Virus record (IMG/VR): IMGVR_UViG_3300018080_000098
Coordinates: 124,001 to 188,000 of that record
DNA length: 64,000 nucleotides
Reading direction: 5' to 3' (one strand)
The notes beneath the pieces are model-generated. The model did not search any database. It had not been told where the DNA came from and saw only the letters and a list, made by a program, of their open reading frames with translations. This document shows, in pieces, positions 3,984 to 61,115 of the stretch (within the stretch, counting starts at the first letter, position 1; each line of letters begins with the position of its first letter). The position numbers and the translations under genes are program-made.

Positions 3984-5573
3984 CTACTGCAGCATCGCCA
4001 ACATCTTGATCACCTTCGTCTCCACCTCCTCACCCTCCTGCTCTACACTCTCCAACGCCTTCCCGATCACCGTCCCCGTCACCACCTCCACACCAACCTT
4101 CTGTGCCTTCCCTTCATCAGCACTTACCAACAAATCACCAGGCACCACATCCCCTCCTCCCGTCGTGCAATACACATCCACGATCCCACACACCGACAAC
4201 GGATACTGATTCTCCACCTCCACACTCCTCCCCAAATTAATTCCTGGCTCCTCAGCAATTACTCCCACCACCTTCGCATCCGCTACCGATGTAGACTTTT
4301 TGTACACTCCATCTGTATCCATGATGATCACGTTCCCGGATTCACACTCATCAGGTACTACGATCCATTCGGCTACGTCGCAACCACCCATAGGAGTGAT
4401 AGATCCATGTGCTTCAATGTCTCCGTGAGTACATACGTTCCCATTGTTCAAAACAGTAAATTGGTCAATCCAAACACCTGGGGTAGTAAACTCTACTTGA
4501 CATCGAATGAAGTGACTTTTGCTAGCTACCTGTTCAGTATCCTGATTTCTCATCAGCAGCATAGTACCGTGGTAATCGTTCATTAATCCACGGATAGCCG
4601 AGATGGCATCGTTGGTAGATCCATTTACCAAGTCGCTGTACACGATAAACTTGGGATTGAAGTTGCTCAGAATGCTGCGCCCTGGGTCCGCACCCGACCC
4701 CGTAGCAGCAGCGTTCACTTCCAAGTGCATATCGTAATTAGCATTTCGAGGAACGAAACGAATCGTCTTATCACCTAGTTCAGTATTCAATACGATATCG
4801 AAATCTTCTGTGCTGTTGCTTCCTGTGATCAATAGAGCTTTCGTATTGGTCACCCCATATGTGTAGTCACCAATGAAAAGGGTAGGTTCAGTTCCTCCGC
4901 TTACGAATCCTCCAAGCTTCACCGTCGTCCCTATAGGAATGAACCCCGAGTACCCACCACTCTTGATCCCCGTCGTGTCGTACCAAAACTCCACTGCAGG
5001 ATTAGCGCGAACCTCCATCCCGTACCCAGACCGTAACACCAACCCCTTCTCATTCCCATCCAATACCTGCTCACCACCCTCGATCACGCTATACCCATTC
5101 GTCGCTCCCAAATTATCTCGACGGCCACCTATGTACAACCGCCCTGTGCTGTACGTGTCATTTTCTCCATTACTACCCAACTGAACCGTGTCCGCCCCCA
5201 AAACCATGTCCACCCTAACATTTGTAGATGTATCCGAACTACTGTCAAAGTATACTGTGGCTAGTTGCTTCCGAGGATCCACCAGAGGTCTTGTGTCCAT
5301 ACCTCGAGTGATCCGCAGGTAGTTCTTATGCCCAGCTGCAGGCTGGTTATCAGAATCCACCATCAAATACATGTCGTCCATAGACAACACGTTCCCACCG
5401 AACCCCGCTCCGTAATCCAACCCAGCTACGATCGCGTCCACTTCAGCATCAGTTAAATTGGCATCCAACTCTCGAAGTGTCTGTGCCGATCCATCGTTTG
5501 CGTATACTGTTGCGTAACGCAATGACCGAATTATCCCGTCCACCACTCGACTCTGCACGTAAGGAATGCCCAT
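3984..5573 (-). CDS. Tail fibre/tailspike-like protein with C-terminal intramolecular-chaperone (peptidase G2-like) domain
   Basis: Gly/Thr/Asn-rich beta-type body; C-terminus GGCDVAEW...VVGVIAEEPG...GDLLVSADEGKA...GTVIGKALE matches the D-x-A-E...GKAL pattern of phage fibre autocleavage domains. Confidence 0.75.
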   Translation of the reverse strand: MGIPYVQSRVVDGIIRSLRYATVYANDGSAQTLRELDANLTDAEVDAIVAGLDYGAGFGGNVLSMDDMYLMVDSDNQPAAGHKNYLRITRGMDTRPLVDPRKQLATVYFDSSSDTSTNVRVDMVLGADTVQLGSNGENDTYSTGRLYIGGRRDNLGATNGYSVIEGGEQVLDGNEKGLVLRSGYGMEVRANPAVEFWYDTTGIKSGGYSGFIPIGTTVKLGGFVSGGTEPTLFIGDYTYGVTNTKALLITGSNSTEDFDIVLNTELGDKTIRFVPRNANYDMHLEVNAAATGSGADPGRSILSNFNPKFIVYSDLVNGSTNDAISAIRGLMNDYHGTMLLMRNQDTEQVASKSHFIRCQVEFTTPGVWIDQFTVLNNGNVCTHGDIEAHGSITPMGGCDVAEWIVVPDECESGNVIIMDTDGVYKKSTSVADAKVVGVIAEEPGINLGRSVEVENQYPLSVCGIVDVYCTTGGGDVVPGDLLVSADEGKAQKVGVEVVTGTVIGKALESVEQEGEEVETKVIKMLAMLQ

Positions 5574-5653
5574 TTTTTCCTGCTCCTCTAGCCTGTCTCA
5601 GAATAAATTCCGCCACCGAAACCGCTTACCACGCGGTTTCTCCTTAAATCTAA

Positions 5654-6190
5654 CTAGCTTCCGCTGTATCTACGTGTCCAATTTGCATTCTCATCCAATT
5701 TGATCTGCAACCGCACCGTATCCTTCGCATCACCCAAATGCTTCAGCACATTCCCGCACAACTTCTCGAACGATTCCCACGTCTGCTGATAAATAGCCAA
5801 CTCCGGTACCACCAGCCCCACAGCCTGTCGAGCCCCCGCTCCACTCGTCCGCCCATTGATCACCCCCACCCGAGCCAACTCCTGACGCACTAACACCTCC
5901 AACTTCCCCAACGCACGTACCACCTTCATCGTACTCATCTGTACCGCCATCATACGGTCCACACCAGCCTGCAAACGATGCACTGCCTCCTGTGACCGGC
6001 CCACCGAATCAGCATCCCCACTGTTCACTCGCTTAGGTATCCACCGCGCTACATCCATATACGAACGCACTTCACCCACCAAATCCCCACCTATCTCCAG
6101 CACTTCAGCCTTGCGTTCCAGCTCCCCCAGTACCTCCCTCACCCCACCTCGATCACGGATCCCATCTACGTCCAAAACTTCCTTAGCCAT
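5654..6190 (-). CDS. Hypothetical protein
   Basis: 178-aa ORF preceded by the CTTGTAAAAT element at 6222-6231. Confidence 0.7.
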   Translation of the reverse strand: MAKEVLDVDGIRDRGGVREVLGELERKAEVLEIGGDLVGEVRSYMDVARWIPKRVNSGDADSVGRSQEAVHRLQAGVDRMMAVQMSTMKVVRALGKLEVLVRQELARVGVINGRTSGAGARQAVGLVVPELAIYQQTWESFEKLCGNVLKHLGDAKDTVRLQIKLDENANWTRRYSGS

Positions 6191-6434
6191 CGATCACACC
6201 TCGATCACAACTTCCCCTCATATTTTACAAGACTTCACACCCCTCACAAAAGAGACGCACAAACAACCCCTTATACCCTCGAACACTCGCGCGCAACACG
6301 GGGGGCTCTTTTGGAACAAAAAGAAAAACCCAAAAAAAGACCACATCGTAAATGTGTCACAGATACACCAGCACAAATCTCCCCAACGTCTCAACGTTTC
6401 AAATTGTCTTTGTGTGTTTCAGGGACCCGTTCAA

Positions 6435-6472
6435 AGAAAAAAGCGAGCCCACCTTCCACAGTGGACCCGCTT
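6435..6472 (-). terminator. Intrinsic terminator
   Basis: Minus-strand stem AAGCGGGTCCAC/GTGGGCTCGCTT followed by a T run. Confidence 0.7.
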
Positions 6473-6564
6473 CAAGTCATCATGCAACCAATGGTACCCA
6501 CTAAGTGCTTTGACCGATCGATGGAATGAACGAACAGTGGATACCCAGCTACACGATCAACGTC
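6435..6564 (-). ncRNA. Putative ~130-nt rod-shaped small RNA
   Basis: Lies between a sigma70-type promoter and an intrinsic terminator. GGUAUCCACU/AGUGGGUACC and CGUGUAGCUG/UGGUUGCAUG pair fully only on the minus strand (G-U wobbles). Confidence 0.55.
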
Positions 6565-6569
6565 TCCCG

Positions 6570-6598
6570 TTTCTACTCACGTTCCGCGGCAAAGTCAA
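6570..6598 (-). promoter_or_regulatory. sigma70-type promoter
   Basis: TTGACT-17 nt-TAGAAA preceded by a T-tract (TTTTTTACTTGAC). Confidence 0.65.
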
Positions 6599-6769
6599 GT
6601 AAAAAATCGCCCCAAGTACAAAAAAGTTCCGCCTTCCTCTCCTACCGGTTCACCAGTAATTACCCCACCTTCCAACCAGAAAATAGACTAAAATGCCCAA
6701 AAGAATACACCACCCCATCCCTTGGCCGTAATTGCAAGGAAAATACCCCTCAGAACAACGCCGCACTAT

Positions 6770-7945
6770 TTATTCAGGAGGTCCTCGAGCCCACCAGCCC
6801 ACCGCAGACTCTCGGCTACAGCAGTCCTCGTACCGCACCACCGCACCGAAGTTGGCAGGATTCTGGAGGCGCTCCTTTCGCAGCGTCCACAGAACCAAGC
6901 AGGTCAGCGTGATCTCCAGCAGCTTCTGCTGCACACCACGCCATAGTAGCCGCCGCAGCAGCACCAGGTCATCCCACGCCTCGAACTCCGACACTGTCCA
7001 GTGGCCACGCCACAGAAGCTCCCCGTCCCCGTACGCTAGCAACCGACGCACGTACCGAGGGTGGAAGTCCTCCACCGCTTCAGCACCCTCCCCCAGCAAC
7101 CGAGGTACCGGACTGTAGAGCTCAGGCTGCTTGAACAGCGCAGACTCCTGCTGGTACAGAAGAGCCGTCTGCAACCGAGGCATCAGCCAGTCGAAAGCTG
7201 GTGGATGGTGCAACTGCCAGCGAGCTCTATCAGGATGGTCGTAGCGCCGCTCTACCTGAGAAGGATACCGGAGCAGGTACGACCAGCTCTCCCGCAGCAC
7301 ATCCTCCACCATCCGCGCCAGACGTTTCACCGCTTCGAGCGGGATACCAATCTCAGTACACTCGTTGACTATCATCCCCCGGTGGTCGTTTACCACCCTG
7401 CGGATGTAGAAGGTGTACTGCTTCCGTGGATGACATTGACGCAGCCGTCTTCGCCACGCCTCCGCGCGTATTGCTGCGTTCCTGGCTAACAGCTTGTTGG
7501 AAGGCTTGCGGTAGTTCGCGTTCTCGCAGTGCAGCTCCAGGATTTCAGAGCCTGTGCCCGCCACACCATCCATCGTATCCCGAAGCCGCAGCTCCGTACG
7601 CCCCAGCACCCGACGCTCCCCGTAGGACATCTTGCCCTTCGTGTTGGACCCCTCCAGCGCAGCTGCCATCGCAGTCAATCGGCTGAAGGTCGTCAGGAAG
7701 GCTTTCAGATGCTCCTTGTCCGCCAGGTTGTAGCAGAGCGCCCGTGTGGTCTGCTTGAATCGGTGAGGCTTCTTGATTCCACGCTTGGTGAGCCCACCAG
7801 TGACCCGTAGCCCCTTGGCCAGCTGTAGTAGCAGAGTGCTTTGGTGTTCTTGCACACCAACCCACGTCTGCTCGGGTCGACCGTGATACCAACGGTCCGA
7901 CTCTACAGCTCGAAGAAACCTGGCGCTTCTCACGTCCAAGGACAC
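6770..7945 (-). CDS. Hypothetical protein
   Basis: 391-aa ORF; CTTGTAAAAT element at 7981-7990 upstream. Confidence 0.75.
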   Translation of the reverse strand: MSLDVRSARFLRAVESDRWYHGRPEQTWVGVQEHQSTLLLQLAKGLRVTGGLTKRGIKKPHRFKQTTRALCYNLADKEHLKAFLTTFSRLTAMAAALEGSNTKGKMSYGERRVLGRTELRLRDTMDGVAGTGSEILELHCENANYRKPSNKLLARNAAIRAEAWRRRLRQCHPRKQYTFYIRRVVNDHRGMIVNECTEIGIPLEAVKRLARMVEDVLRESWSYLLRYPSQVERRYDHPDRARWQLHHPPAFDWLMPRLQTALLYQQESALFKQPELYSPVPRLLGEGAEAVEDFHPRYVRRLLAYGDGELLWRGHWTVSEFEAWDDLVLLRRLLWRGVQQKLLEITLTCLVLWTLRKERLQNPANFGAVVRYEDCCSRESAVGWWARGPPE

Positions 7946-8013
7946 AGCTCTACCTCAGTGGGACAGGCCCACCTCCCCCTATTTTACAAGGTGCACGTTG
8001 TCTTCGAGGGCGC

Positions 8014-8955
8014 CTAGAGAGACGCGCGAGCAGATTCTGTCGAGCTTACCTCATTGGAAGGAATTTCTTGAGTAGTTTCAGCTATCTTGCCAACACCGCC
8101 CGACACCTCTTCGAGCTCCGCCAGCACCTTCTGCACCAGCGAATCCTCCTGGTTCAACCTGCACGCGCTCACCTTGTTCTCGGACTCGTCGATGTTGTCT
8201 CGCTCGTAGACCTCCAGGTACCCACGCTCCTTTGCCGCCTGGAACACCTCCTGGCAGAGCCGCACCTCTCGGAACTCCTCTCCCAAACGCCACATCACTC
8301 GAGTGATGAAATATTTGACACCAACGAAGGGCATCATTCCCTCACTCGCTGCCAGAAGCCGAATCAAGCTCGCGTAGTTGAACCCGTCCATATCGAAGGA
8401 AGACTCTTTGTACTGGTCACGGTACTTGTTCTCAAACAGCGTCCTGGTGGGAACGTAGATGCAGTTGTCGGGGGCTACGATACGTTGAGCACGCTGGTAC
8501 CTGCACACCATCACCACCCCCATCCCTTCCTGCACCAGCCGCTTGGCGAGCTCGTTGTAGTTCACTCCGCCCACTACCAGTACTACAACGTCGAACTGCT
8601 TGCGCGCCAGCGTGCCGTGCGCGTCGAACAGAAGATTGAGGTTCAGGTCGTCCTCCGTGAACCCATCTTCTTGCGTGTAGACTTTTGCGAATCCTCGAGA
8701 ACGCCACGCTCGGTGGTCCACCCCATCGCCCGATACGATGTCCCGGCTGTAGTAGACTGTCCCACTACAGAACCTTCCTACGGACTGCACGAACTTCTGT
8801 ACGCCGCGGGCGATCACTTCGTCCTGCAAATCGTCCCTCTCAGCCAACAAACCGTCCAAGTCGATAAACACCCCAATCTTGGGACGATTCTGCATCTCAT
8901 CAATCCTGTCTCTAATCTGTTTTACCTGTTGGGAAGACATTTCCACTTCCTCCAT
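8014..8955 (-). CDS. NYN (LabA/DUF88, PIN-like) domain protein, degenerate active site
   Basis: IGVFIDLDGL, DLNLLFDA and FDVVVLVVGGVNYNELAKRLVQEGMGVVMV follow the NYN pattern, but the SGDGDF motif reads GGVNY. Confidence 0.7.
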   Translation of the reverse strand: MEEVEMSSQQVKQIRDRIDEMQNRPKIGVFIDLDGLLAERDDLQDEVIARGVQKFVQSVGRFCSGTVYYSRDIVSGDGVDHRAWRSRGFAKVYTQEDGFTEDDLNLNLLFDAHGTLARKQFDVVVLVVGGVNYNELAKRLVQEGMGVVMVCRYQRAQRIVAPDNCIYVPTRTLFENKYRDQYKESSFDMDGFNYASLIRLLAASEGMMPFVGVKYFITRVMWRLGEEFREVRLCQEVFQAAKERGYLEVYERDNIDESENKVSACRLNQEDSLVQKVLAELEEVSGGVGKIAETTQEIPSNEVSSTESARASL

Positions 8956-8957
8956 TG

Positions 8958-11063
8958 CTATCTGCGCCGGTAGCTCTGGTTACGATTGTAGCCACCTCTG
9001 CGCCGTTTATTCACGCGTTTATTCCCTCCCCGCTTCTTGTTCAGTGTGCCTATCAGGTAGCTTCCAGCTGATGTACCTGCCAGGGTTTCATGCTCTATAT
9101 TGTCTCCAAGTTCGTCTAGGAATCGAGAAGGAGTGCAATCAATCACGGAGTTGTATCGAAACTCCTCCCTCGTGTGCGTGATTGTTAAGTAGCGTTCCGC
9201 ACGTGTGAGCGCCACGAAGAATATCCGCCTTTCCTCCTCGATGTCTTTCTGCATCTGCTTAGTAGACTTGAGTTGACCAAAGTCGTCTTCTTGCCTCACG
9301 ATGGGCATTACTCCATCAATAGCACCAATCACGTACAGACGAGGTAACTCCAGCCCCTTCGCCGCGTGGCACGTCATCAGATGCACCCGGTCGTCGTTTT
9401 CGTCTTCATCAGTAGATTGCATCAAAGCGGTCCACTCGATGAAGCGGAGAAGACCGCTTCCATGCGCTTCATCGAATTCCTGCGCCGCTTGGATGAGCTC
9501 ATCAATGTGCTCGAGCTTCCCTAAACTTTTGGCGTCCCCGTCTGTTTCTAGCACCTGCCGATACCGTGTTACCTCCACCACCTTCTCGATCATCGGGGCT
9601 ACCAAATCCCGCGGCATCTGATGTAGCGCTGCCAGAACCTCCCGGATGTTCTCAGCCCCCCGCAAAGAGCGCCCCTTGAGCACCCCTTCGTAGTCACGCT
9701 TCTTGAACACCGTCAGAATATGGCAACCAAGCTCCTCTTTGAGCTTGTAGAGCTTTGCGTAGCTCGTTTCCCCAAAGCCTCTGGGCGGCTTGTTGTAGAT
9801 ACGGATGAAGCTAGCGTCGTCCGCACCATTCAGGACGAGCTTGAGGTACGCTAAGATGTCCTTCACAATCGACCGATTGTAGAATCCAAGACCACCAATG
9901 ATTCGGTGAGGAACGTTGTTCGTGACCATGAGCTCTTCAAAGATACGAGACTTCGTGTGCATCCGGTACAGGATGGCAAAGTCGCCCCAGTTGGCTTTCT
10001 CTTTTCGTACCTCCGTAAGGATTTGGTCCACCACCACAGCTGCTTCCTGTTTAGGGTCGAGGCACTCAAGGCAGCGCACAGGTTCCCCATCTACTCGTGC
10101 TCGGATTTTCTTAGGTTTCCTTCCTTCGTTGTGCTCGATGAGCTCGTTGGCCACTTCAGCAATCTGGTGGGTTGAGCGAAAGTTGTCTTCCAGGAAGTAC
10201 ACCTTCAAATCCGGGAAGTCCTGCTCCATTGCATTCATGTTTTCAGGTCGTGCTCCTCGGAAGGCATAAATAGACTGGTCGTCGTCCCCGATAACATACA
10301 CATTGCCATGGGAACTGGCTAGGTGTTTAACCAATTCGTATTGGCTGAGATTGGTGTCCTGACCTTCGTCTACTAGTAGGAACTGAGTCCGCTCAGCATA
10401 TTTAGTTCTGACATCCTCATCTTCTCGAAGTAGTAGAACTGTTTTCATAATGAGGTCATCAAAGTCTAGCGTACGCGTTTTTTCTAGCGTAGCAGCGTAG
10501 CGTCTGTATACCTTCGCGTAGAAGACGTCTTCTTTGCTAGACCCTTCATCCAGCGCATCATAGACGTCATTAGGGAGATAAAGCTGCTGTTTCTTTTTTG
10601 AGATAAACCGTTTTGCACGGTCGGGTGATTGATAGTTTTTCTGTCCCTTAACCTTTTTCGGATCGGTCCCTGTCTCCAACGCAATAGCTTGCACTACATA
10701 CGCTTTTGAGTCGGAGTCATCACAGATGGTGTAATTTTCAGGCAACCCTGCTGCTTTGTGTTCGTACCGAAGCAGTCTGGCACATAGGGAATGGAAGGTA
10801 GAGACATGCACCATCTGAGCTGCGGATTTAGGTAACATCTGGGCTACACGTTCTCTCATCTCATCCGCTGCTTTGTTAGTAAACGTAATCGCTACGATGT
10901 TTCGTGGGCTCACCTTGTGGTGTTTGATTAGGTGCGCAATGCGATGTGTAGCGCAGCGGGTTTTCCCTGACCCGGGGCCGCTTACCACCAGTGCCGCCCC
11001 CTCAAAGTGTGTCGTCGCTGCTCGTTGCTGTGGTGTAAGATGCTCTAAGTAATCTTGTTCCAT
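8958..11063 (-). CDS. uvrD: UvrD/PcrA SF1 DNA helicase
   Basis: SGPGSGKT, AITFTNKAA, LLVDEGQD, GDDDQSIYAFRGA, NFRST, MTCHAAKGLE, EERRIFFVALTRA. Confidence 0.95.
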   Translation of the reverse strand: MEQDYLEHLTPQQRAATTHFEGAALVVSGPGSGKTRCATHRIAHLIKHHKVSPRNIVAITFTNKAADEMRERVAQMLPKSAAQMVHVSTFHSLCARLLRYEHKAAGLPENYTICDDSDSKAYVVQAIALETGTDPKKVKGQKNYQSPDRAKRFISKKKQQLYLPNDVYDALDEGSSKEDVFYAKVYRRYAATLEKTRTLDFDDLIMKTVLLLREDEDVRTKYAERTQFLLVDEGQDTNLSQYELVKHLASSHGNVYVIGDDDQSIYAFRGARPENMNAMEQDFPDLKVYFLEDNFRSTHQIAEVANELIEHNEGRKPKKIRARVDGEPVRCLECLDPKQEAAVVVDQILTEVRKEKANWGDFAILYRMHTKSRIFEELMVTNNVPHRIIGGLGFYNRSIVKDILAYLKLVLNGADDASFIRIYNKPPRGFGETSYAKLYKLKEELGCHILTVFKKRDYEGVLKGRSLRGAENIREVLAALHQMPRDLVAPMIEKVVEVTRYRQVLETDGDAKSLGKLEHIDELIQAAQEFDEAHGSGLLRFIEWTALMQSTDEDENDDRVHLMTCHAAKGLELPRLYVIGAIDGVMPIVRQEDDFGQLKSTKQMQKDIEEERRIFFVALTRAERYLTITHTREEFRYNSVIDCTPSRFLDELGDNIEHETLAGTSAGSYLIGTLNKKRGGNKRVNKRRRGGYNRNQSYRRR

Positions 11064-12979: not shown

Positions 12980-13866
12980 CAGGATGGCTCCTTTCGTGTG
13001 AGCCGGTCTATCGTTGGCACGTCTACCCGGTACAACTGCTGCTCAGCCAGGAACTTCATCAGCCCAGTCGGGTTCCCATCCTGGCGCTTCGAGAGCAAAC
13101 GTAACCCATCGCGCAGCTTCACCAATCGGTAGTTGAGCTCAATCTGCTCCCTGTATTTTACAACACGTTCCAGCTGTTTCCCCGTCAACACCCCCTTGGC
13201 CTTCGCTACCCTGTATGCCGCTCCAGGGGATGTCCCACACCCAGCGAGCTCCGTCAGAAGCACTGTCTTCATCCTCGGCACCCCTCGAGGAATGTTGTCC
13301 GAGTCCCCCAGAAACGCCTTCATGCACGCCACGTTCTCCGGAGGAACGCCCAGTGTTTCCTTGCACTTGTGTGCATCTATTAGACCTCCTTTACGCACTA
13401 CGGCGCACACCCGCTCCCCGCGGATTAGTTGCCAGAGATCTCTGTCTTCACTGATCATGAACGCCCGCTCACCCTTTTCCAACTTCTGAACGAAACAAGC
13501 TATCGCATCATCCGCTTCACCATGAGGAGCTTTTATTAGCTTTCCACGCATAAAATCTAGCAACTTCAGTGTTTTAGCCATAAACCCCTCGAACTCCAGA
13601 TCCCTTTTTCTGTCCCCCTTATACCCCGGAAACATACGAGCCCGGATCTCCCTGCCATCCCCCTCCAAAGCAACAACTAATTCAGCTCCAGGATACTCGC
13701 GCCGCAATTTTGCCAACATAAATATAAGCAATTCCAACGCCTTGGGCCGGTCCGTTGAATGATAAGCGCGCCTAACAAAGTTCGCCCAGTCCACAATTAC
13801 ATATTGTTTTTGCTGTGGAAATATAGGCGACATGCCTGATTTCATTGGGTTTTTAATACTTATCAT
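12979..13866 (-). CDS. 5'-3' exonuclease / flap endonuclease (PolA N-terminal / T4 RNase H family)
   Basis: IVDWANF, MFPGYKGDRK, EADDAIA, ISEDRDLWQL, FLGDSDNIP. Confidence 0.9.
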   Translation of the reverse strand: MISIKNPMKSGMSPIFPQQKQYVIVDWANFVRRAYHSTDRPKALELLIFMLAKLRREYPGAELVVALEGDGREIRARMFPGYKGDRKRDLEFEGFMAKTLKLLDFMRGKLIKAPHGEADDAIACFVQKLEKGERAFMISEDRDLWQLIRGERVCAVVRKGGLIDAHKCKETLGVPPENVACMKAFLGDSDNIPRGVPRMKTVLLTELAGCGTSPGAAYRVAKAKGVLTGKQLERVVKYREQIELNYRLVKLRDGLRLLSKRQDGNPTGLMKFLAEQQLYRVDVPTIDRLTRKEPS

Positions 13867-24348: not shown

Positions 24349-24379
24349 CGTAATTTGCCTCGTAATATATTTTACAACA

Positions 24380-33232: not shown

Positions 33233-34678
33233 ATGCATGCGGTAAATCATTCTCAAGCGGAAAACTGGAGTACTTTTAATGACTTAGCCAAGAGGACTCT
33301 TGAATATGATCCTTTGGTGAAAGAGGATCTAACTCGGACGTTCCTCCAAATCGAACAGTTGATATTCAAGGGTGTAGACTATCTCCTGATGGCTACTACG
33401 TTCGTGGAAGACAATTTGTGCTATCTTCTCGCAGAGATAGCGTCTGGAGTCATTAAGAGCCGGAAGGTCTACAAGGGGAAACGGGTCCGCCGACGAGTTG
33501 CCATGAACGACGAGATAGAAATGGGCGCTGAAAACAAGCGGATCTTCGGTATCGGCTTCGATCTCTTCAAACTCTCACGCATGGATCGCCAACACGCAGT
33601 TCCCTTCTCCAAACGTATCATTCGCACACTCCGCATTTCTACCAGCCACTACGAAAACATCCTTACCGCGTTCGCTAAGGTGGGCGCCCGCTACATTGAA
33701 GTATCCGACGATCTCGCCCACACTACCCTGCGCTTGATCAACCAACGCCAGAAAAACGAGAAGCGTGCTACGAAAAAGGGAGCAGCTTCCGAAACAGCGC
33801 TTACCAAGCAGGCCGAAGAGTTCATCGATCAAATGGACCTCCTCGAGCTCGATATGGGGTGCGTTGAGCCCAATCTTCTCTACGGCACCATCCGCGCAGT
33901 AGTTCGCATCCTGAAGCGCGTGCGCGTTCTGCAAGAGCGCATTCTGAAAGCGTACTCCCGTTTGGTGCTGAAGCCAGTGAAAGGCCGCGCACAAACAGAG
34001 ATGGAGGCCCTTGACCTGTTTCAATCAGGTAGCCTGGGCCTCTCACGCGCCATCTCCTTGTACGATCTCCGCTGCGGCACCAGCTTCCCTACCTTCGCAA
34101 ATTGGTGGATACGTCAGAAAATACTCGGGAGCGCGAAGCACAGCGGTTCCCTCATCAAGTTACCTGGTTCCGTAATCGAACGCTACCAGGAGATCACGAA
34201 AGCTGAACGTTTCTTTGAATCCAACCCCGACCTCCGCGATTCTTATACTATAGAAGATGTAGCCGCACGTTGCAAAACTACAGCCAAGTCCGTCGAGCTT
34301 GTACTCCGAAAAGTGCGCAGCACCCGTGTGGTCTCTCTAGAGTCGATGGTGAGCAGCAACGAGGAGGGGTACGAAAGTGACCTGGCAGCCGACCGAGCTC
34401 TGCTTGATGAGTCAATGGAAGAAGAGGAGGCGCTTCAGGCCACCTCCGAGTTCGTTTCTCAAGTACTCAGTCATGTAGAGGAAAGCCAACGCAACCTCGT
34501 GTGCCTGCGTTACGGAATCATTGAGCGCGTGGTATCTAAACTTGACCCTCGTCAAGAGGTACGTGAGCTCTTCCGCCAAGCTGCATGCAAAGCTTTGCTG
34601 CAGCAGAAGATGTCGATGCGTGCTAACAGCCATCTAGCGATGCTCCGGGTGGAGGAGCTTCCCGCCGACCAAAAATAG
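33233..34678 (+). CDS. Phage RNA polymerase sigma factor (RpoD/sigma70 family)
   Basis: Region 2 DLFQSGSLGLSRAISLYDLRCGTSFPTFANWWIRQKI, LIKLP, region 3 TIEDVAARC...VVSLE; region 4 degenerate. Confidence 0.88.
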   Translation: MHAVNHSQAENWSTFNDLAKRTLEYDPLVKEDLTRTFLQIEQLIFKGVDYLLMATTFVEDNLCYLLAEIASGVIKSRKVYKGKRVRRRVAMNDEIEMGAENKRIFGIGFDLFKLSRMDRQHAVPFSKRIIRTLRISTSHYENILTAFAKVGARYIEVSDDLAHTTLRLINQRQKNEKRATKKGAASETALTKQAEEFIDQMDLLELDMGCVEPNLLYGTIRAVVRILKRVRVLQERILKAYSRLVLKPVKGRAQTEMEALDLFQSGSLGLSRAISLYDLRCGTSFPTFANWWIRQKILGSAKHSGSLIKLPGSVIERYQEITKAERFFESNPDLRDSYTIEDVAARCKTTAKSVELVLRKVRSTRVVSLESMVSSNEEGYESDLAADRALLDESMEEEEALQATSEFVSQVLSHVEESQRNLVCLRYGIIERVVSKLDPRQEVRELFRQAACKALLQQKMSMRANSHLAMLRVEELPADQK

Positions 34679-34785
34679 CCCAGACGTGTAGAAACCACAC
34701 CTTCTCTTGTAAAATACGAGAAGGCAGAACACTGCTGAGCTGTGACACGGAATCACTACCGTTTACCGGATACTGAAAGGAGCCA

Positions 34786-41283: not shown

Positions 41284-43725
41284 ATGCCCCTCATCGAATA
41301 CGAATCCCTCGATTTCGAGAACGCCTACATCTACCGGAAGTGTAGCTTCCCCCTGGAAAATCAGGGGCTCGTGCTCGTCCGCGGCCTCAACGTCGACGAT
41401 GGCGGCTACCTGGGTGCTGGCAAGTCTTCTATCTTTGAGGTGTTTGCTTCCCTTCAGGTGGGAAGAGGCGGTAAAAGAGAGCGCCGCCAAGGCAACTTCC
41501 GCACCAACCTGGTGAACTCGTTCGTCGGGGAAGATATGGTAGCTTCCCTCAAGCTCCGCGTCGACGGCCATCCGTACGAAATACGACAGTACCAGCAGCA
41601 CCACCGTTTTCACAACAAAATACTGGTCATCGATCGCGTGACCGGACAGGACATCCGACCCCGCTCCAGTGGCCACTCTCCCTTCAAATGGGTGCGTGAT
41701 GAGTTTCTGCGTATCGATGAGACTACGTTCTTCAATCTCATCTATCTGGTGCAGGAGCTTAATAATGTGATGATCCACGGGAAGGAGTACGAGCGCCGCA
41801 ATCGCTTGACAGCGATGTTCGATTTGGATATCTACGATGAGCTCCGCGCACTAGCTAAACGGGCCCTCTCAATGCATACTACTTCCATGTCGGACTTCGA
41901 GGAAGTCCGCAGCGAGCTTAGAGAGGTAAAACAGAAAATCTTCGCCCTACCGGACTTGGTAGACCTCGAAGCGGAGTTCGAAACAGCGGAAGCCCTCCTG
42001 AACCATATGCAGGAGCAGCACGAAGAGGATACTCAGGAATACACGCAGGTAGCCGATCTCTGCTCAAAACTTCGGCAACGCTCCACAGGACGTCGGCAAA
42101 TCATGTCGAAGTTCAAAGGCAGCTCCCTGACAAACACGTTCGACCACCCCAAGGATATTACCATTCGCAACGTGAAAAGATGGAAGAGTCGCTATGATAA
42201 CTTCAGCGCTGACTACATGGCTGCCCAGACAGACCTCGAGAAGCTCGAGAAACGCGATGCCCTTCGTGCCCAACTATTGAAGCTGAGCGACCGTGATGCA
42301 GAAGAGATTCAGGACGACTTGACCGACACCAAGACGAAGCTCACCTATATGAATCAGGTCGAGCTCCCTCAATCGGAAGAACGTCAGAGCCTGCTCATCA
42401 AATTGCAGCGGTTGACGGAGCCCGTTACACCGCTGGAAGAGCTTGAGGATGAGTTGGAAGCTGAGCAAAAGGAAGAGACAGAACTCAAGCGTGACGTGAA
42501 GGACCTGGATGCCGAAGTGCGTGAAGCTGTATGCCCACACTGCAAGCGCCCCTTTGATATGACAGCTGAGGAGCTAGCGGAGAAGCGAGGACGCTTAGCT
42601 ACTGCGCGGGACAGACTGCAGGAGCTTACACGAACAATCCATAAGCTGAAGAAGGAAATCAAGGCCTCCCGCGACATCAAAAACATCCGTGGGCGACTCA
42701 AGGCGTTCGAGACGCAGCGCTCCCCCGAGGAAGTGACAGAAGATATTCGGGAGCTTTCAGGTAAAGAGCGCAGGCTCGCCTCCGAACTCGAGACGTCGCG
42801 CCAGCGTACCAGGATAGAAGCAGAACTGGAGACGATGCCCACCGCGAGCAAAGATGAGCTCATCGAAAAGTGCAGCAAGCTTCGTCGCAGTGTCGAACGC
42901 GCCAGGGAACGCCACGAGGTGGGGAAGTTCATTGTGGAGAAGTTGGAGGAGTTGAAAAACCTCCCCAAGGGAAGCTTGGACGAAGCACAAGGACTACTAC
43001 GAGAACTTCAAGGACGCATGACGAGGATGTCGTCGAAAATTTCACAGGCGAGCGCAGATGCAACACACCTGAAAGAGCGTGTCAACGAGCTGCGTCAGCT
43101 ACTTCGGCGGGAGACCACCCTGAAGCGCACGTTGGAAAAGCAGAAAGCAATCGTCTCCGAGATTACGTGCTTGGAAGCCCTGAACAAAGCGTTCGGCACC
43201 AACGGTATGAAACAAGACCGCTTCGCCACCATCCTATCCGATGCGGCTGAGCGTACAGTCCCTGCATACTCAGATATCCTGTGGCCAAACCGTAACGTTT
43301 CCCTAGACTTGTCCGGTGAAGATGGCTCCTCGCTCCAGTTTGCGCTGGGGCGCCAGTCGGGAAATGTGGCCACCAGAAGCAGTATGCTCTCTGGCGGCGA
43401 ACGCCATAAAGCAGGGCTCGCTTTCCTTTTCGGGCTGCGCGACCTCAAGGAGCTCTACACGGGCAGCCGGTCCAACGTTCTTATCGTGGACGAGCCCTTC
43501 GGAAACCTCGATCCTCTCGGAACCGAAGGACTCATTTCCATCTTCGCTCTGCTCAAACAGAAGTTCGGTTCCGTCTTCGTCATCAGTCACAGACCAGAAG
43601 TTCTGTCCCATCCAGTGTGGGACCAGACGTGGTGGGCCATTCGCGAAAACAACAACGCGACACTTTATTTGGAAGACCCACCAGCGCGGTACCATCAAAT
43701 TGCCAACAACCTTGTAAAACAATAA
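41284..43725 (+). CDS. sbcC: SbcC/Rad50 ATPase
   Basis: GAGKSS, Q-loop YLVQ, coiled coil with CPHC Zn hook, LSGGE, IVDEP, VISH. Confidence 0.92.
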   Translation: MPLIEYESLDFENAYIYRKCSFPLENQGLVLVRGLNVDDGGYLGAGKSSIFEVFASLQVGRGGKRERRQGNFRTNLVNSFVGEDMVASLKLRVDGHPYEIRQYQQHHRFHNKILVIDRVTGQDIRPRSSGHSPFKWVRDEFLRIDETTFFNLIYLVQELNNVMIHGKEYERRNRLTAMFDLDIYDELRALAKRALSMHTTSMSDFEEVRSELREVKQKIFALPDLVDLEAEFETAEALLNHMQEQHEEDTQEYTQVADLCSKLRQRSTGRRQIMSKFKGSSLTNTFDHPKDITIRNVKRWKSRYDNFSADYMAAQTDLEKLEKRDALRAQLLKLSDRDAEEIQDDLTDTKTKLTYMNQVELPQSEERQSLLIKLQRLTEPVTPLEELEDELEAEQKEETELKRDVKDLDAEVREAVCPHCKRPFDMTAEELAEKRGRLATARDRLQELTRTIHKLKKEIKASRDIKNIRGRLKAFETQRSPEEVTEDIRELSGKERRLASELETSRQRTRIEAELETMPTASKDELIEKCSKLRRSVERARERHEVGKFIVEKLEELKNLPKGSLDEAQGLLRELQGRMTRMSSKISQASADATHLKERVNELRQLLRRETTLKRTLEKQKAIVSEITCLEALNKAFGTNGMKQDRFATILSDAAERTVPAYSDILWPNRNVSLDLSGEDGSSLQFALGRQSGNVATRSSMLSGGERHKAGLAFLFGLRDLKELYTGSRSNVLIVDEPFGNLDPLGTEGLISIFALLKQKFGSVFVISHRPEVLSHPVWDQTWWAIRENNNATLYLEDPPARYHQIANNLVKQ

Positions 43726-57083: not shown

Positions 57084-57191
57084 AGTTCTACTTCTTTGAA
57101 CATACACGGGAAGGTTCTTTATACTATAACTAGAAAGAACTGAGCTCCCGCTGCGGAAAGCTGTCTTGTAAAACAGAGTAGAGAGGTAACA

Positions 57192-59380: not shown

Positions 59381-59453
59381 GCTGGCGTAGCTCAACTGGT
59401 AGAGCAGCTGATTTGTAATCAGCCGGTTGGGGTTTCGAGCACCTCCGCCAGCT
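59381..59453 (+). tRNA. tRNA-Thr (UGU), CCA not encoded
   Basis: Acceptor GCTGGCG/CGCCAGC, D stem GCTC/GAGC, anticodon stem GCTGA/TCAGC with TGT at 59414-16, T loop TTCGAGC. Confidence 0.92.
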
Positions 59454-61042: not shown

Positions 61043-61115
61043 CGGGGATGTGGTGTAATCTGGTAACACACGTGCTTTGGGAGCACGAATTGCCGTTCAA
61101 ATCGGACGTCCCCGA
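61043..61115 (+). tRNA. tRNA-Pro (UGG) with atypical 8-bp acceptor and shortened T stem
   Basis: CGGGGATG/CGTCCCCG, D stem GTGT/ACAC, anticodon stem CGTGC/GCACG with TGG at 61078-80, T loop TTCAAAT, C1-G72 and A73. Confidence 0.85.

What the first reader, a model, noticed from the sequence alone, without database searches (positions are those of the whole stretch)
6435..6598. Orphan rod-shaped small RNA with its own host-type promoter and terminator
Seen: TTGACT-17-TAGAAA, then ~130 nt, then a stem with a U-run, in a 580-nt gap with no credible ORF. The 5' and 3' parts form a rod of about 25 bp around a 33-nt loop. Several pairs are G-U, so it folds only on the minus strand, which agrees with the promoter. 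Inference: an early sRNA (antisense, decoy, or Y/6S-like mimic).
Basis: partly seen in the sequence, partly recalled or inferred. Interest (0 to 1): 0.6.

Follow-up and report, generated by a model that had tools for sequence, protein, structure and literature searches.

The report
Conserved small RNA gene in jumbo phages
The flagged stretch looks like a real, stand-alone gene for a folded RNA of about 130 bases, found in the same place in at least ten related uncultured giant phages, but its job and its expression remain untested.

Summary
On the minus strand of a 579-nt gene-free gap there is a T-tract, TTGACT-17-TAGAAA, about 130 nt of strongly folding sequence, and a 14-bp terminator hairpin with U6. 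The fold scores z -5.1 on this strand and -0.8 on the other. The window belongs to a 349,793-bp jumbo phage with terminal repeats, from a sediment metagenome.

Ten distinct relatives keep the same gap in the same gene order. Their flanking proteins are 37-60% identical. All keep the promoter, including the odd -10 that never ends in T. All keep a GAGAC start region, a helix that begins right after it, and the terminator. Both helices survive by compensatory changes.

The 25-bp rod with its large loop is not conserved. The interior is branched, split into two hairpins, or shorter in the relatives. No ORF is conserved and Rfam has no match. The phage encodes no Ro60, RtcB or reverse transcriptase.

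A second orphan RNA with the same TAGAAA promoter and a C-rich loop lies elsewhere in this genome.

My best reading is a new family of early, host-polymerase-transcribed phage small RNA that probably acts in trans. Its target is unknown and no RNA data exist. The main rival is a terminated leader upstream of a late operon.

The parts
6720..6739 (-). Hairpin just after the stop codon of the upstream 391-aa gene (CCTTG..CAAGG). It is present with different sequence in all relatives.
6690..6719 (-). Conserved block GATGGrsTGGT, then 16-17 nt, then (C/T)ATTTT. It is either the upstream gene's terminator region or a second, weaker sigma-70-like promoter (TGGAsw-16-TATTTT). Which one is undecided.
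   Evidence: Invariant columns in the 7-way alignment; folds.
6599..6610 (-). T-rich, UP-element-like tract upstream of the -35.
   Evidence: conserved.
6593..6598 (-). -35 hexamer TTGACT.
   Evidence: CTTGAC is conserved in all relatives, except TAGACA in L007/L262.
6570..6575 (-). -10 hexamer TAGAAA, 17 nt after the -35. It is atypical because the last base is A.
   Evidence: Variants: TAGAAA in win, L004, L006, L299, L005, L009, L294 and L298; TATAAA in L002; TAAAAA in L262; TAGAAC in L293. In the whole genome only one other promoter carries TAGAAA.
6437..6569 (-). The RNA, counted from the base after the -10 to the end of the U-run (133 nt). The start is inferred at about 6565-6563, which gives about 127-129 nt.
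   Evidence: z -5.09 on this strand and -0.83 on the other. The start site is inferred, not measured.
6547..6561 (-). 5' arm of the first helix (P1), GUUGAUCGUGUAGCU. Its sequence is conserved within clade 1. It pairs with 6476-6489.
6476..6489 (-). 3' arm of P1. Its sequence differs between relatives but pairing is kept.
   Evidence: 7 of 14 pairs show changes on both sides.
6493..6545 (-). Upper 11-bp rod (6535-6545 paired with 6493-6503) and its 31-nt apical loop (6504-6534). This part is specific to this phage.
   Evidence: It is not conserved.
6437..6473 (-). Intrinsic terminator T1: a 14-bp stem, a 6-nt loop and U6.
   Evidence: Covariation is shown.
6362..6436 (-). A-rich spacer after T1. 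In this phage C 0.17 < G 0.29. The C>G pattern and the GAC(A) repeats are seen in relatives (C>G in 8 of 10).
6332..6361 (-). Weak second hairpin followed by T7 and a T-rich tract (a possible back-up terminator, T2). The T-tract and the TTTGTTCCAA motif are conserved in most relatives (not L293, L262, L005 or L294).
   Evidence: hairpin about -4 kcal/mol. The scanner did not call it.
6221..6231 (-). CTTGTAAAATA, a phage-specific promoter-like motif in front of the downstream 178-aa gene. The RBS GAGGTG is at 6197-6202 and the ATG at 6188-6190.
   Evidence: 29 copies in the genome against 1.3 expected. Present in all relatives, with small changes in L004, L293 and L296.

Best explanation
This is a stand-alone gene for a structured non-coding RNA of about 130 nt, and it defines a new family.

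What the sequence comparison shows:
- The family occurs in a clade of uncultured jumbo phages, always between a 391-aa gene and a 178-aa gene.
- A host sigma-70-type promoter precedes it: T-tract, TTGACT, 17 nt, and a conserved but atypical TAGAAA -10.
- A strong intrinsic terminator ends it.
- The conserved RNA features are a GAGAC start region, a helix that begins right after it (its 5' arm is sequence-conserved; its 3' arm drifts but keeps pairing), and the terminator.
- The interior evolves fast, in sequence and even in topology.

What is inferred:
- The host polymerase makes the RNA early in infection, and the RNA acts in trans.
- The paired 5' end and the terminator make it stable.
- The exposed, mostly pyrimidine-rich or C-rich loops of the variable body pair with purine-rich (Shine-Dalgarno-like) sites of host or phage mRNAs, or bind a protein.

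My odds: about 0.8 that it is a genuine discrete RNA gene, and about 0.3 that it works by loop-mediated base-pairing.
For: Structure and strand bias in the window:
- Whole RNA z -5.09 on the minus strand and -0.83 on the plus strand.

A conserved gap in a conserved gene order:
- The order is UvrD helicase, NYN protein, 391-aa gene, a 480-760-nt gap (seven aligned relatives; one search reports 616 nt for an eighth contig that returned no DNA), 178-aa gene, 529-aa gene.

What the ten distinct RNAs share:
- The T-tract, CTTGAC, a 17-nt spacer and TAGAA(A/C) or TA(T/A)AAA, then GAGAC, a first helix and a terminator, 102-154 nt in all.
- The 12 nt after GAGAC(AC) find a better partner in their own body than in shuffled bodies. 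Fisher's combined p is 5e-8, although the rows are not fully independent.

Covariation:
- RNAalifold recovers the first helix and the terminator in each clade separately.
- Clade 1: 84.5% of cells are paired, against 37-48% when partners are slid. Ten pairs changed on both sides, matched by 0 of 500 shuffles.
- Clade 2: 91.7% paired, against 38-52% when slid.
- In 6 of 7 relatives tested, the sense-strand body folds better than the antisense.

Non-coding and not a known family:
- No reading frame is conserved.
- Rfam gives no match.

Promoter class:
- The promoter fits about 45 host-type promoters in this genome.
- The phage has a sigma factor but no RNA polymerase of its own that I could find.

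A paralogue:
- A second orphan RNA carries the same rare TAGAAA promoter and a 29-nt C-rich loop, z -3.03.
- That loop resembles the apical loop of the syntenic RNAs in L294 and L298.

Precedent:
- Giant phages are known to make small RNAs from a start site closely followed by a terminator, and one such RNA is conserved by position (PMC11512511).
Against: - No transcript data exist. The only runs that hold this phage are DNA metagenomes with identical sequence.
- The -10 never ends in T, the most conserved -10 position for sigma-70 (established knowledge). Promoter strength, and even which holoenzyme uses it, are therefore uncertain.
- No target was found. Loops and the 5' end pair with this phage's translation start regions no better than shuffled controls do.
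- Complementarity to the neighbouring gene's start region is not conserved.
- The most conserved segment lies mostly inside a helix, which is unusual for a seed.
- Only 2 nt separate P1 from the terminator, unlike the A/U-rich single-stranded site typical of Hfq-type sRNAs.
- The covariation rests on only 4-5 sequences per alignment.
- The host is unknown.
Confidence: 0.6

Rival explanations
1. It is a terminated leader rather than a working RNA. The promoter and T1 (with the C-rich spacer and T2) would form a checkpoint in front of the 178-aa, 529-aa and ~1,900-aa operon. The short RNA would be the by-product of termination. This resembles lambda's pR'-tR' 6S transcript or the 5'UTR-derived sRNAs of giant phages. 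A phage antiterminator acting at the conserved start region and first helix would let polymerase read through later.
For: - Promoter, start region and terminator are conserved while the interior is free to change.
- In 8 of 10 relatives the 70 nt after T1 is C>G and A-rich, which is rut-like. A second hairpin with a T-tract follows.
- The unit sits directly upstream of a long co-oriented operon.
- Eight of the eleven sRNAs of phage 201phi2-1 arise by premature termination in a 5' UTR (PMC11512511).
Against: - The downstream gene has its own conserved CTTGTAAAATA promoter and RBS in every relative, so it does not need this promoter.
- The body keeps strong sense-strand structure, and the first helix is kept by compensatory changes, which a by-product would not need.
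- I saw no conserved alternative pairing that would compete with T1. This was checked by eye only.
- No N- or Q-like protein was identified, and none was searched for specifically.
- The paralogue elsewhere in the genome has the same design.
Confidence: 0.2
2. It is a protein-binding RNA (decoy or scaffold). The conserved 5' arm and first helix would be the recognition site for a host or phage protein, possibly the neighbouring 391-aa protein or the NYN nuclease. The variable body would be a tolerated appendage.
For: - One arm of the helix is conserved in sequence and the other only in pairing, which is typical of helices read by a protein.
- Synteny with the NYN and 391-aa genes is invariant.
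- The 391-aa protein has a weak PUR-alpha/PC4-like match, a single-strand nucleic-acid-binding fold, over residues 73-222. VIA-align gives Z 6.0 with 96 residues aligned at rmsd 3.5; Foldseek gives probability 0.47.
Against: - The fold match is below the level the tool calls reliable, and the model is of medium confidence (pLDDT 69.6).
- The whole gene block is syntenic, so adjacency says little.
- No Ro60 or RtcB is present, and Rfam gives no Y RNA or 6S match.
Confidence: 0.1
3. It is part of a replication origin. A transcription unit next to short repeats and a T-rich unwinding stretch, inside the DNA-metabolism gene block, would supply an activating or priming transcript, as at T7 or T4 origins.
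For: - The gap lies next to helicase, 5'-3' exonuclease, DnaB-like and ribonucleotide reductase genes.
- Clade 2 has 5-8 GAC(A) repeats at about 8-10-nt spacing just after T1, followed by a T-rich tract.
Against: - A strong terminator stands between the promoter and the repeats.
- The repeats are few in this phage (2 GAC in 70 nt).
- Cumulative GC skew shows no turning point here. It follows gene orientation.
- RNA-level covariation is not explained by this model.
Confidence: 0.06
4. There is no function of its own. A decayed early-gene promoter and RBS happens to be followed by the upstream operon's terminator.
For: - GAAACGGGAGAC resembles the early-gene leader and RBS motif GAAACGGAGAAAC of this genome.
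- T1 may also end upstream transcripts.
Against: - The layout is conserved, including the odd -10 and the helix with compensatory changes, across relatives whose flanking proteins are only 37-60% identical.
- The rest of the gap is barely alignable.
Confidence: 0.04

Closest known systems
Small RNAs of giant Pseudomonas phages (201phi2-1 sRNA005, phiKZ sRNA upstream of gp182), found by ONT-cappable-seq or dRNA-seq (PMC11512511; PMC8244752)
   Same: A short transcription unit in a jumbo phage in which a terminator closely follows a start site. It lies in an intergenic or 5'UTR position upstream of a structural-type gene and is conserved by position among related giant phages. Its structure is predicted and its function unknown.
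   Different: - Those phages use their own RNA polymerases and promoters. This one has a host sigma-70-type promoter.
- There is no sequence relation (no blastn hit to the known phage collection).
- Theirs are shown by RNA-seq. This one is predicted from sequence alone.
Lambda 6S RNA (the pR'-tR' terminated transcript) and N/Q or put-type antitermination leaders
   Same: A host-type promoter followed within about 130-200 nt by a strong terminator, placed ahead of a late operon. The conserved promoter-proximal region could be a modification site.
   Different: - The downstream gene has its own conserved phage-type promoter.
- No Q- or N-like factor or put-like double hairpin was identified.
- The first helix shows RNA-level covariation.
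Lambda OOP RNA and P22 sar (phage cis-antisense small RNAs with their own promoter and terminator)
   Same: A small size, its own sigma-70 promoter, an intrinsic terminator, and a phage origin.
   Different: Those RNAs overlap a gene on the other strand. Here no conserved gene lies opposite.
Bacterial 6S RNA and Y RNA (YrlA)
   Same: The 5' and 3' parts pair into a long helix, and the size is about 100-180 nt.
   Different: - Rfam models give no match.
- The rod is not conserved.
- There is no central bubble and no tRNA-like module.
- The phage has no Ro60 or RtcB.
C-rich-loop sRNAs that mask Shine-Dalgarno sites (for example staphylococcal RsaE and RNAIII hairpins; established knowledge)
   Same: Stable hairpins present unpaired C/U-rich loops. 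This applies to the paralogue at genome position 45,9xx and to the syntenic RNAs of L294 and L298, and more weakly to the UUCAUUCCAUC loop here.
   Different: No target was found, the loop sequence is not conserved across the family, and the host is unknown.

Membership tests
Independent sRNA gene (own promoter and Rho-independent terminator, non-coding) | Sigma-70-type promoter directly upstream | tested here: met
   TTGACT-17-TAGAAA with a T-tract. It belongs to a class of about 45 promoters in this genome and is conserved in 10 relatives. Caveat: the last base of the -10 is A or C.
Independent sRNA gene (own promoter and Rho-independent terminator, non-coding) | Intrinsic terminator at a fixed short distance | tested here: met
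   14-bp stem and U6. The RNAs are 102-154 nt in all relatives. Covariation is shown.
Independent sRNA gene (own promoter and Rho-independent terminator, non-coding) | No conserved reading frame | tested here: met
   Six-frame comparison of 9 gaps: similarities appear in all frames and strands, and no frame stays open across relatives.
Independent sRNA gene (own promoter and Rho-independent terminator, non-coding) | Structure kept by compensatory changes | tested here: met
   for the first helix and the terminator. The interior is not conserved.
Independent sRNA gene (own promoter and Rho-independent terminator, non-coding) | A discrete transcript of the predicted size | not testable with these tools
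   Only DNA metagenome runs hold the phage.
6S RNA | Match to the family model, and a conserved long rod with a central open-promoter-like bubble | tested here: not met
   No Rfam hit, even at E up to 10 or at gathering scores in relatives. The rod is present only in this phage.
Y RNA / YrlA | Ro60 (TROVE) partner, usually encoded nearby, and a tRNA-like module | tested here: not met
   No TROVE or RtcB in the 350-kb genome. No Rfam match. A host-encoded Ro60 cannot be excluded.
Cis-antisense RNA (OOP- or sar-like) | An overlapping gene on the opposite strand | tested here: not met
   Plus-strand ORFs over the RNA (for example 6111-6602) are not conserved in relatives.
Riboswitch or attenuator leader | A conserved ligand- or factor-sensing fold and an alternative pairing that competes with the terminator | tested here: inconclusive
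   The interior is not conserved and Rfam gives no match. No conserved anti-terminator was seen by eye, but this was not tested formally.
Lambda pR'-tR'-type antitermination leader | Downstream genes depend on read-through, and an antiterminator protein is present | tested here: inconclusive
   The architecture fits, but the downstream gene has its own conserved promoter. Antiterminator genes were not searched for.
Retron msr-msd RNA | An adjacent reverse transcriptase | tested here: not met
   No RVT_1 match in the genome.

The most novel reading that the evidence does not exclude
The family may be a 'handle plus variable body' RNA. A 5' handle of about 22 nt and its helix are kept, while the interior is swapped freely between phages. 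This genome has two paralogues under a private TAGAAA promoter type. Such an RNA could serve as a programmable partner for the invariably adjacent NYN nuclease and PUR-like 391-aa protein. That would be a new RNA-directed module that jumbo phages use against host or competitor RNAs.
Probability: 0.05. Interest if true: 0.85.

Novelty: new member of a known kind. Interest (0 to 1): 0.5.

Why it matters
Small RNAs of virulent and jumbo phages are barely charted, and almost none has a known role. This one is a candidate defined entirely from sequence. It has ten homologues, compensatory base changes, a distinctive conserved promoter variant, and a paralogue in the same genome.

The predictions are sharp and can be tested even without the uncultured host:
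- where transcription starts;
- termination at T1;
- the first helix;
- whether polymerase reads through into the late operon.

The work also sorts this phage's promoters into a host-type early class and a CTTGTAAAATA class, which probably depends on the phage's own sigma factor. That helps annotate the whole clade.

Tried and rejected
- **Known phages.** blastn of the gap against 50,697 phage records gave no match.
- **Flanking proteins as single queries in IMG/VR.** Nothing was found. A profile of the 391-aa family found one locus, L293.
- **DNA pattern scans.**
  - The 18-base pattern gave 0 hits in viral contigs. In metagenome contigs it gave 50 hits, of which only 4 are true: L247, L250, L262 and the phage's own genome.
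  - One chance hit (L272) comes from a record titled human gut metagenome. It is a microbial contig and was not used further.
  - The clade-2 pattern gave 0 hits in viral contigs.
  - The 17-base pattern in 185,579 prokaryote genomes gave 120+ hits. All lie in coding-like context without the promoter.
- **Missing DNA.** The contig of P0004/P0010 could not be fetched.
- **Sequencing runs.** Three DNA metagenomes hold the phage. One is probably the source. The two others hold identical fragments that do not cover the RNA. There were therefore no natural variants and no RNA.
- **Target search.**
  - A 9-nt match links the apical loop (CCAUCGAUC) to the start codon region of the 178-aa gene in this phage. 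It is not conserved, and the relatives use GTG starts.
  - Loops and the 5' end tested against all 494 predicted start regions of the phage paired no better than shuffled controls.
- **Start-stop mini-ORF.** A mini-ORF after GGAG (GUG-UAG, AUG-UAG) was rejected, because L004 has GCG and others have CUG.
- **Other classes checked and rejected.** Y RNA, retron and 6S.
- **Origin of replication.** GC skew shows no signal here.
- **Seven-way alignment.** RNAalifold on a MAFFT alignment of all seven sequences could not align the body, so the analysis was done per clade instead.
- **Fold of the 391-aa protein.** No reliable match, only a weak PUR-alpha-like lead.

Full report
**What the window is.** The window is bases 124,001-188,000 of a 349,793-bp virus record with direct terminal repeats. 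CheckV rates it complete. It is a jumbo phage, about 53% G+C, assembled from a sediment metagenome. Around the finding all genes run on the minus strand. In order of transcription they are ribonucleotide reductase, helicases, a 5'-3' exonuclease, a UvrD-type helicase (8958-11063), an NYN-domain protein (8014-8955) and a 391-aa protein with no family match (6770-7945). Then comes the 579-nt gap, followed by a 178-aa protein (5654-6190), a 529-aa protein with a weak scaffold-like hit, and a very long ORF.

**The observation.**
- A T-tract lies at 6606-6601.
- TTGACT is at 6598-6593, followed by a 17-nt spacer and TAGAAA at 6575-6570.
- The RNA runs from 6569 to 6437.
- A 14-bp terminator stem-loop sits at 6473-6440, followed by U6. 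It is the only terminator-like site in 5500-7500.

The minimum-energy fold has 25 pairs in three segments around a 31-nt loop, with 6-7 G-U pairs. The whole RNA scores z -5.09 (0 of 200 shuffles as good) on the minus strand and -0.83 on the plus strand. The body alone scores -2.62 and +0.56. Rfam gives nothing, even at E up to 10.

**The promoter in context.** A scan of the genome for TTGAC, 16-18 nt, then a -10-like hexamer found 89 sites. About 45 form a clear class. They are intergenic, have a T-rich upstream stretch, read TTGACA/G-17-TATTTT or TATATT, and often carry ACGTAAAG in the spacer and a fixed leader (GTCGGACGGAAAC or GAAACGGAGAAAC). They crowd at both genome ends on the minus strand, as early regions do.

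The promoter of the finding shares the T-tract, the -35 and the spacing, but its -10 is TAGAAA. Only one other site in the genome has that -10, at genome position 46,015 on the minus strand.

A second motif, CTTGTAAAA(T/C)A, occurs 29 times against 1.3 expected, mostly 16-90 nt upstream of start codons. Copies stand in front of both genes that flank the gap, at 7989 and 6230. The phage encodes a sigma-70-family protein (window 33233-34678) but no RNA polymerase beta subunit that I could detect. The search for a T7-type polymerase was uninformative, because its control found nothing anywhere. The host polymerase therefore probably transcribes the whole genome: the TTGACA class with the host sigma, and the CTTGTAAAATA class probably with the phage sigma. 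That last point is inference.

**Relatives.** The known-phage collection and single-protein scans of IMG/VR gave nothing. The large protein search found 7 relatives of the 391-aa protein (37-59% identity) and 10 of the 178-aa protein (47-60%). Their contigs come from JGI, ENA and Logan assemblies.

Wherever a contig reaches far enough, it shows the same gene order and a gap in the same place. The gap is 480-760 nt in the seven relatives aligned. One search reports 616 nt for one further contig, which returned no DNA. A profile scan of IMG/VR added one locus on a 260-kb contig.

This gave ten distinct full-length RNAs:
- Clade 1: the window, L002, L004, L299 and L262. These start CGGGAGACGTTGATC, with small variations in L299 and L262.
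- L293, which is intermediate.
- Clade 2: L009, L005, L294 and L298. These start CCGGAGACAC (L005 has TCAGAGACAC).

There are also partial copies (L006, L008, L296, L247).

**What is conserved.** In a seven-way alignment of the whole gaps, most of the sequence is barely alignable. A few blocks are nearly invariant:
- a block just after the upstream gene (a hairpin with changing sequence, then GATGGAsTGGT and, 16-17 nt later, TATTTT);
- the T-tract, CTTGAC, and TAGAAAC-GGAGAC;
- the base and U-run of the terminator;
- TCTTGTAAAATA, followed by the GAGGTG ribosome-binding site of the next gene.

The -10 reads TAGAAA in eight sequences (one of them, L006, a partial copy), TATAAA in one, TAAAAA in one lineage and TAGAAC in one. 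It never ends in T. That the departure from consensus is itself conserved is notable.

**RNA structure across relatives.** The rod with a large loop is not conserved.
- L002, L004 and L262 have a closing helix around branched interiors.
- L299 has one long, interrupted helix with a small apical loop.
- L293 is shorter, at 102 nt.
- Clade 2 has two side-by-side hairpins.

What all share is a helix that begins directly after GAGAC(AC). In a position-by-position table, pair types change as U-A, C-G, A-U and G-C at several positions. I tested whether the 12 nt after the anchor find a better partner in their own body than in 1,000 shuffles of that body. Five of the ten gave p of 0.008 or less. Fisher's combined p is 5e-8, although the rows are not fully independent.

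RNAalifold, run per clade on plain MAFFT alignments, recovered this helix and the terminator. Pair counting gave the following.
- Clade 1: 84.5% of cells paired, against 37-48% with slid partners. Ten pairs changed on both sides, matched by 0 of 500 shuffles. Seven of those ten lie in the 14-pair first helix.
- Clade 2: 91.7% paired, against 38-52% when slid, with seven such pairs.

Within clade 1 the 5' arm is almost invariant in sequence, while the 3' arm drifts and keeps pairing, often through G-U. In six of seven relatives the sense-strand body has a lower z-score than the antisense. The mean is about -2.3 against -0.5.

No reading frame is conserved on either strand. Rfam at gathering scores finds nothing in the relatives.

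**A paralogue.** At genome positions 45,986-45,896 (minus strand; L300:987-897) the only other TTGACT-17-TAGAAA promoter drives a 91-nt unit. It is a rod with a 29-nt C-rich loop (CAGCCUUUCCCCCUCCCCAGUCCCCCCAA) and a U-run. It scores z -3.03 on the sense strand and -0.97 on the antisense strand. The loop resembles the apical loop of the first hairpin of the syntenic RNAs in L294 and L298 (ACCUUCCCAAUCCCCCACAA and its variant). Pyrimidine-rich unpaired stretches recur in the other family members: UUCAUUCCAUC here, GCCUCCUUC in L004, and CCCAUCUCCCAC in L009.

**How it most likely works.**

*Shown:* a conserved promoter-to-terminator unit that does not code for protein and whose first helix and terminator are under selection at the RNA level.

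*Inferred:* the host polymerase makes it early. The paired 5' end and the terminator make it stable. It acts in trans through its exposed loops, which would pair with purine-rich, Shine-Dalgarno-like sites, or through a protein that reads the conserved 5' arm. I put 0.8 on a real discrete RNA gene and about 0.3 on the base-pairing mechanism.

No target was found.
- The 9-nt match between this phage's loop and the start codon region of the 178-aa gene is not conserved.
- Loops and the 5' end pair with the phage's 494 predicted start regions no better than shuffled controls do.
- The host is unknown.

**Rivals.**
1. *A terminated leader.* The 70 nt after T1 is C>G and A-rich in 8 of 10 relatives, where the neighbouring parts of the gap are G>C. 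A weak hairpin and a T-tract follow. Together with T1 this looks like a layered stop in front of a long operon, as at lambda pR'-tR' or the 5'UTR-derived sRNAs of phage 201phi2-1 (PMC11512511). Against it, the next gene has its own conserved promoter, and the RNA-level covariation of the body is left unexplained.
2. *A protein-binding RNA.* The 391-aa neighbour has a weak PUR-alpha/PC4-like match (VIA-align Z 6.0 over residues 73-222; Foldseek probability 0.47; model pLDDT 69.6). This is a lead only.
3. *A replication origin.* The setting among replication genes and the 5-8 GAC(A) repeats in clade 2 fit. The terminator between promoter and repeats, the lack of repeats in this phage, and the featureless GC skew do not.
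4. *A decayed early promoter and RBS with no function.* This is hard to square with conservation across flanking proteins of 37-60% identity.

**Comparison with known systems.** The element works like, and belongs among, stand-alone phage small RNAs. The nearest described cases are the small RNAs of phiKZ-like giant phages, which are defined by a start site closely followed by a terminator, are conserved by position, and have no known function (PMC11512511; PMC8244752). It differs from them in using a host-type promoter and in having no sequence relation to them.

It is not any of the following:
- a 6S RNA or Y RNA, because there is no model match, no conserved rod, and no Ro60 or RtcB in the phage;
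- a cis-antisense RNA, because no conserved gene lies opposite;
- a retron RNA, because there is no reverse transcriptase.

**Limits.**
- No RNA data exist for this phage. The three runs that hold it are DNA, and their sequence is identical where they cover it.
- The covariation rests on 4-5 sequences per alignment.
- The start site, the timing, the target and the host are all inferred or unknown.
- One relative's contig could not be fetched.

**Verdict.** It is a new family of a known kind of element. Interest is moderate, at 0.5.

Noticed in passing
Own genome 45,986-45,896, minus strand (L300:897-987); outside the window: A second orphan unit with the same rare TTGACT-17-TAGAAA promoter. 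It is a 91-nt rod with a 29-nt C-rich loop and a U-run (z -3.03 sense, -0.97 antisense). The loop resembles that of the syntenic RNAs in L294 and L298. A further structured stretch and a strong terminator follow about 190 nt later.
   Followed up: partly
Window 6221-6231, 7979-7989, 13154-13163 and 24368-24377 (minus strand); 34707-34716, 43712-43721 and 57166-57175 (plus strand): The motif (C)TTGTAAAA(T/C)A occurs 29 times in the genome against 1.3 expected, mostly 16-90 nt upstream of start codons. It is probably the promoter class read with the phage's own sigma factor.
   Followed up: partly
Window 33233-34678 (+): A 481-aa ORF with a Sigma70_r2 domain (38.8 bits). No RNA polymerase beta subunit was found, and the T7-type polymerase search was uninformative. 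The phage probably redirects the host polymerase.
   Followed up: partly
Own genome 2-31 kb and 328-349 kb, minus strand; outside the window: About 45 near-consensus promoters (T-tract, TTGACA, spacer often ACGTAAAG, TATTTT) with stereotyped leaders (GTCGGACGGAAAC or GAAACGGAGAAAC) stand in front of many small genes. This looks like an early region at both genome ends.
   Followed up: no
Window 6690-6739 (-), and the same place in L002, L004, L005, L009, L262, L293 and L294: A conserved block right after the 391-aa gene: a hairpin whose sequence changes, then GATGGAsTGGT, then 16-17 nt, then TATTTT. It could be that gene's terminator or a second promoter (TGGAsw-16-TATTTT) about 125 nt upstream of the sRNA promoter.
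   Followed up: partly
L298:430-500, L294:2754-2823, L009:1670-1739, L005:6289-6358; window 6362-6436 (-): The 70 nt after the sRNA terminator is C>G and A-rich in 8 of 10 relatives. Clade 2 has 5-8 copies of (T/G)GACA(C) at about 8-10-nt spacing. This could be a rut-like site or protein-binding repeats.
   Followed up: partly
Window 6770-7945 (-): The 391-aa protein has no Pfam or PHROG match. Its predicted structure (pLDDT 69.6) shows a weak PUR-alpha/PC4-like similarity over residues 73-222 (Z 6.0), a fold that binds single-stranded nucleic acids.
   Followed up: partly
Window 6188-6196 and 6515-6523 (-): The apical loop sequence CCAUCGAUC is perfectly complementary to GAUCGAUGG, which spans the ATG of the downstream 178-aa gene. 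Relatives use GTG starts and lack the match.
   Followed up: yes
Own genome 224,736-226,621 (L301); outside the window: A 1.9-kb stretch without a called gene lies behind a sigma-70-like promoter at 224,751 (+). Rfam finds only two tRNAs further downstream.
   Followed up: no
Window 4000-9000: Two further metagenome runs (another sediment study and a seawater study) hold short fragments 100% identical to this phage. The same phage therefore occurs in more than one sample.
   Followed up: partly
Window 59381-59453 and 61043-61115 (+); own genome about 249.5, 254.2 and 335 kb: The phage carries tRNA genes (Thr-UGU and Pro-UGG in the window). At 249.5 and 254.2 kb they sit directly behind sigma-70-like promoters.
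   Followed up: no
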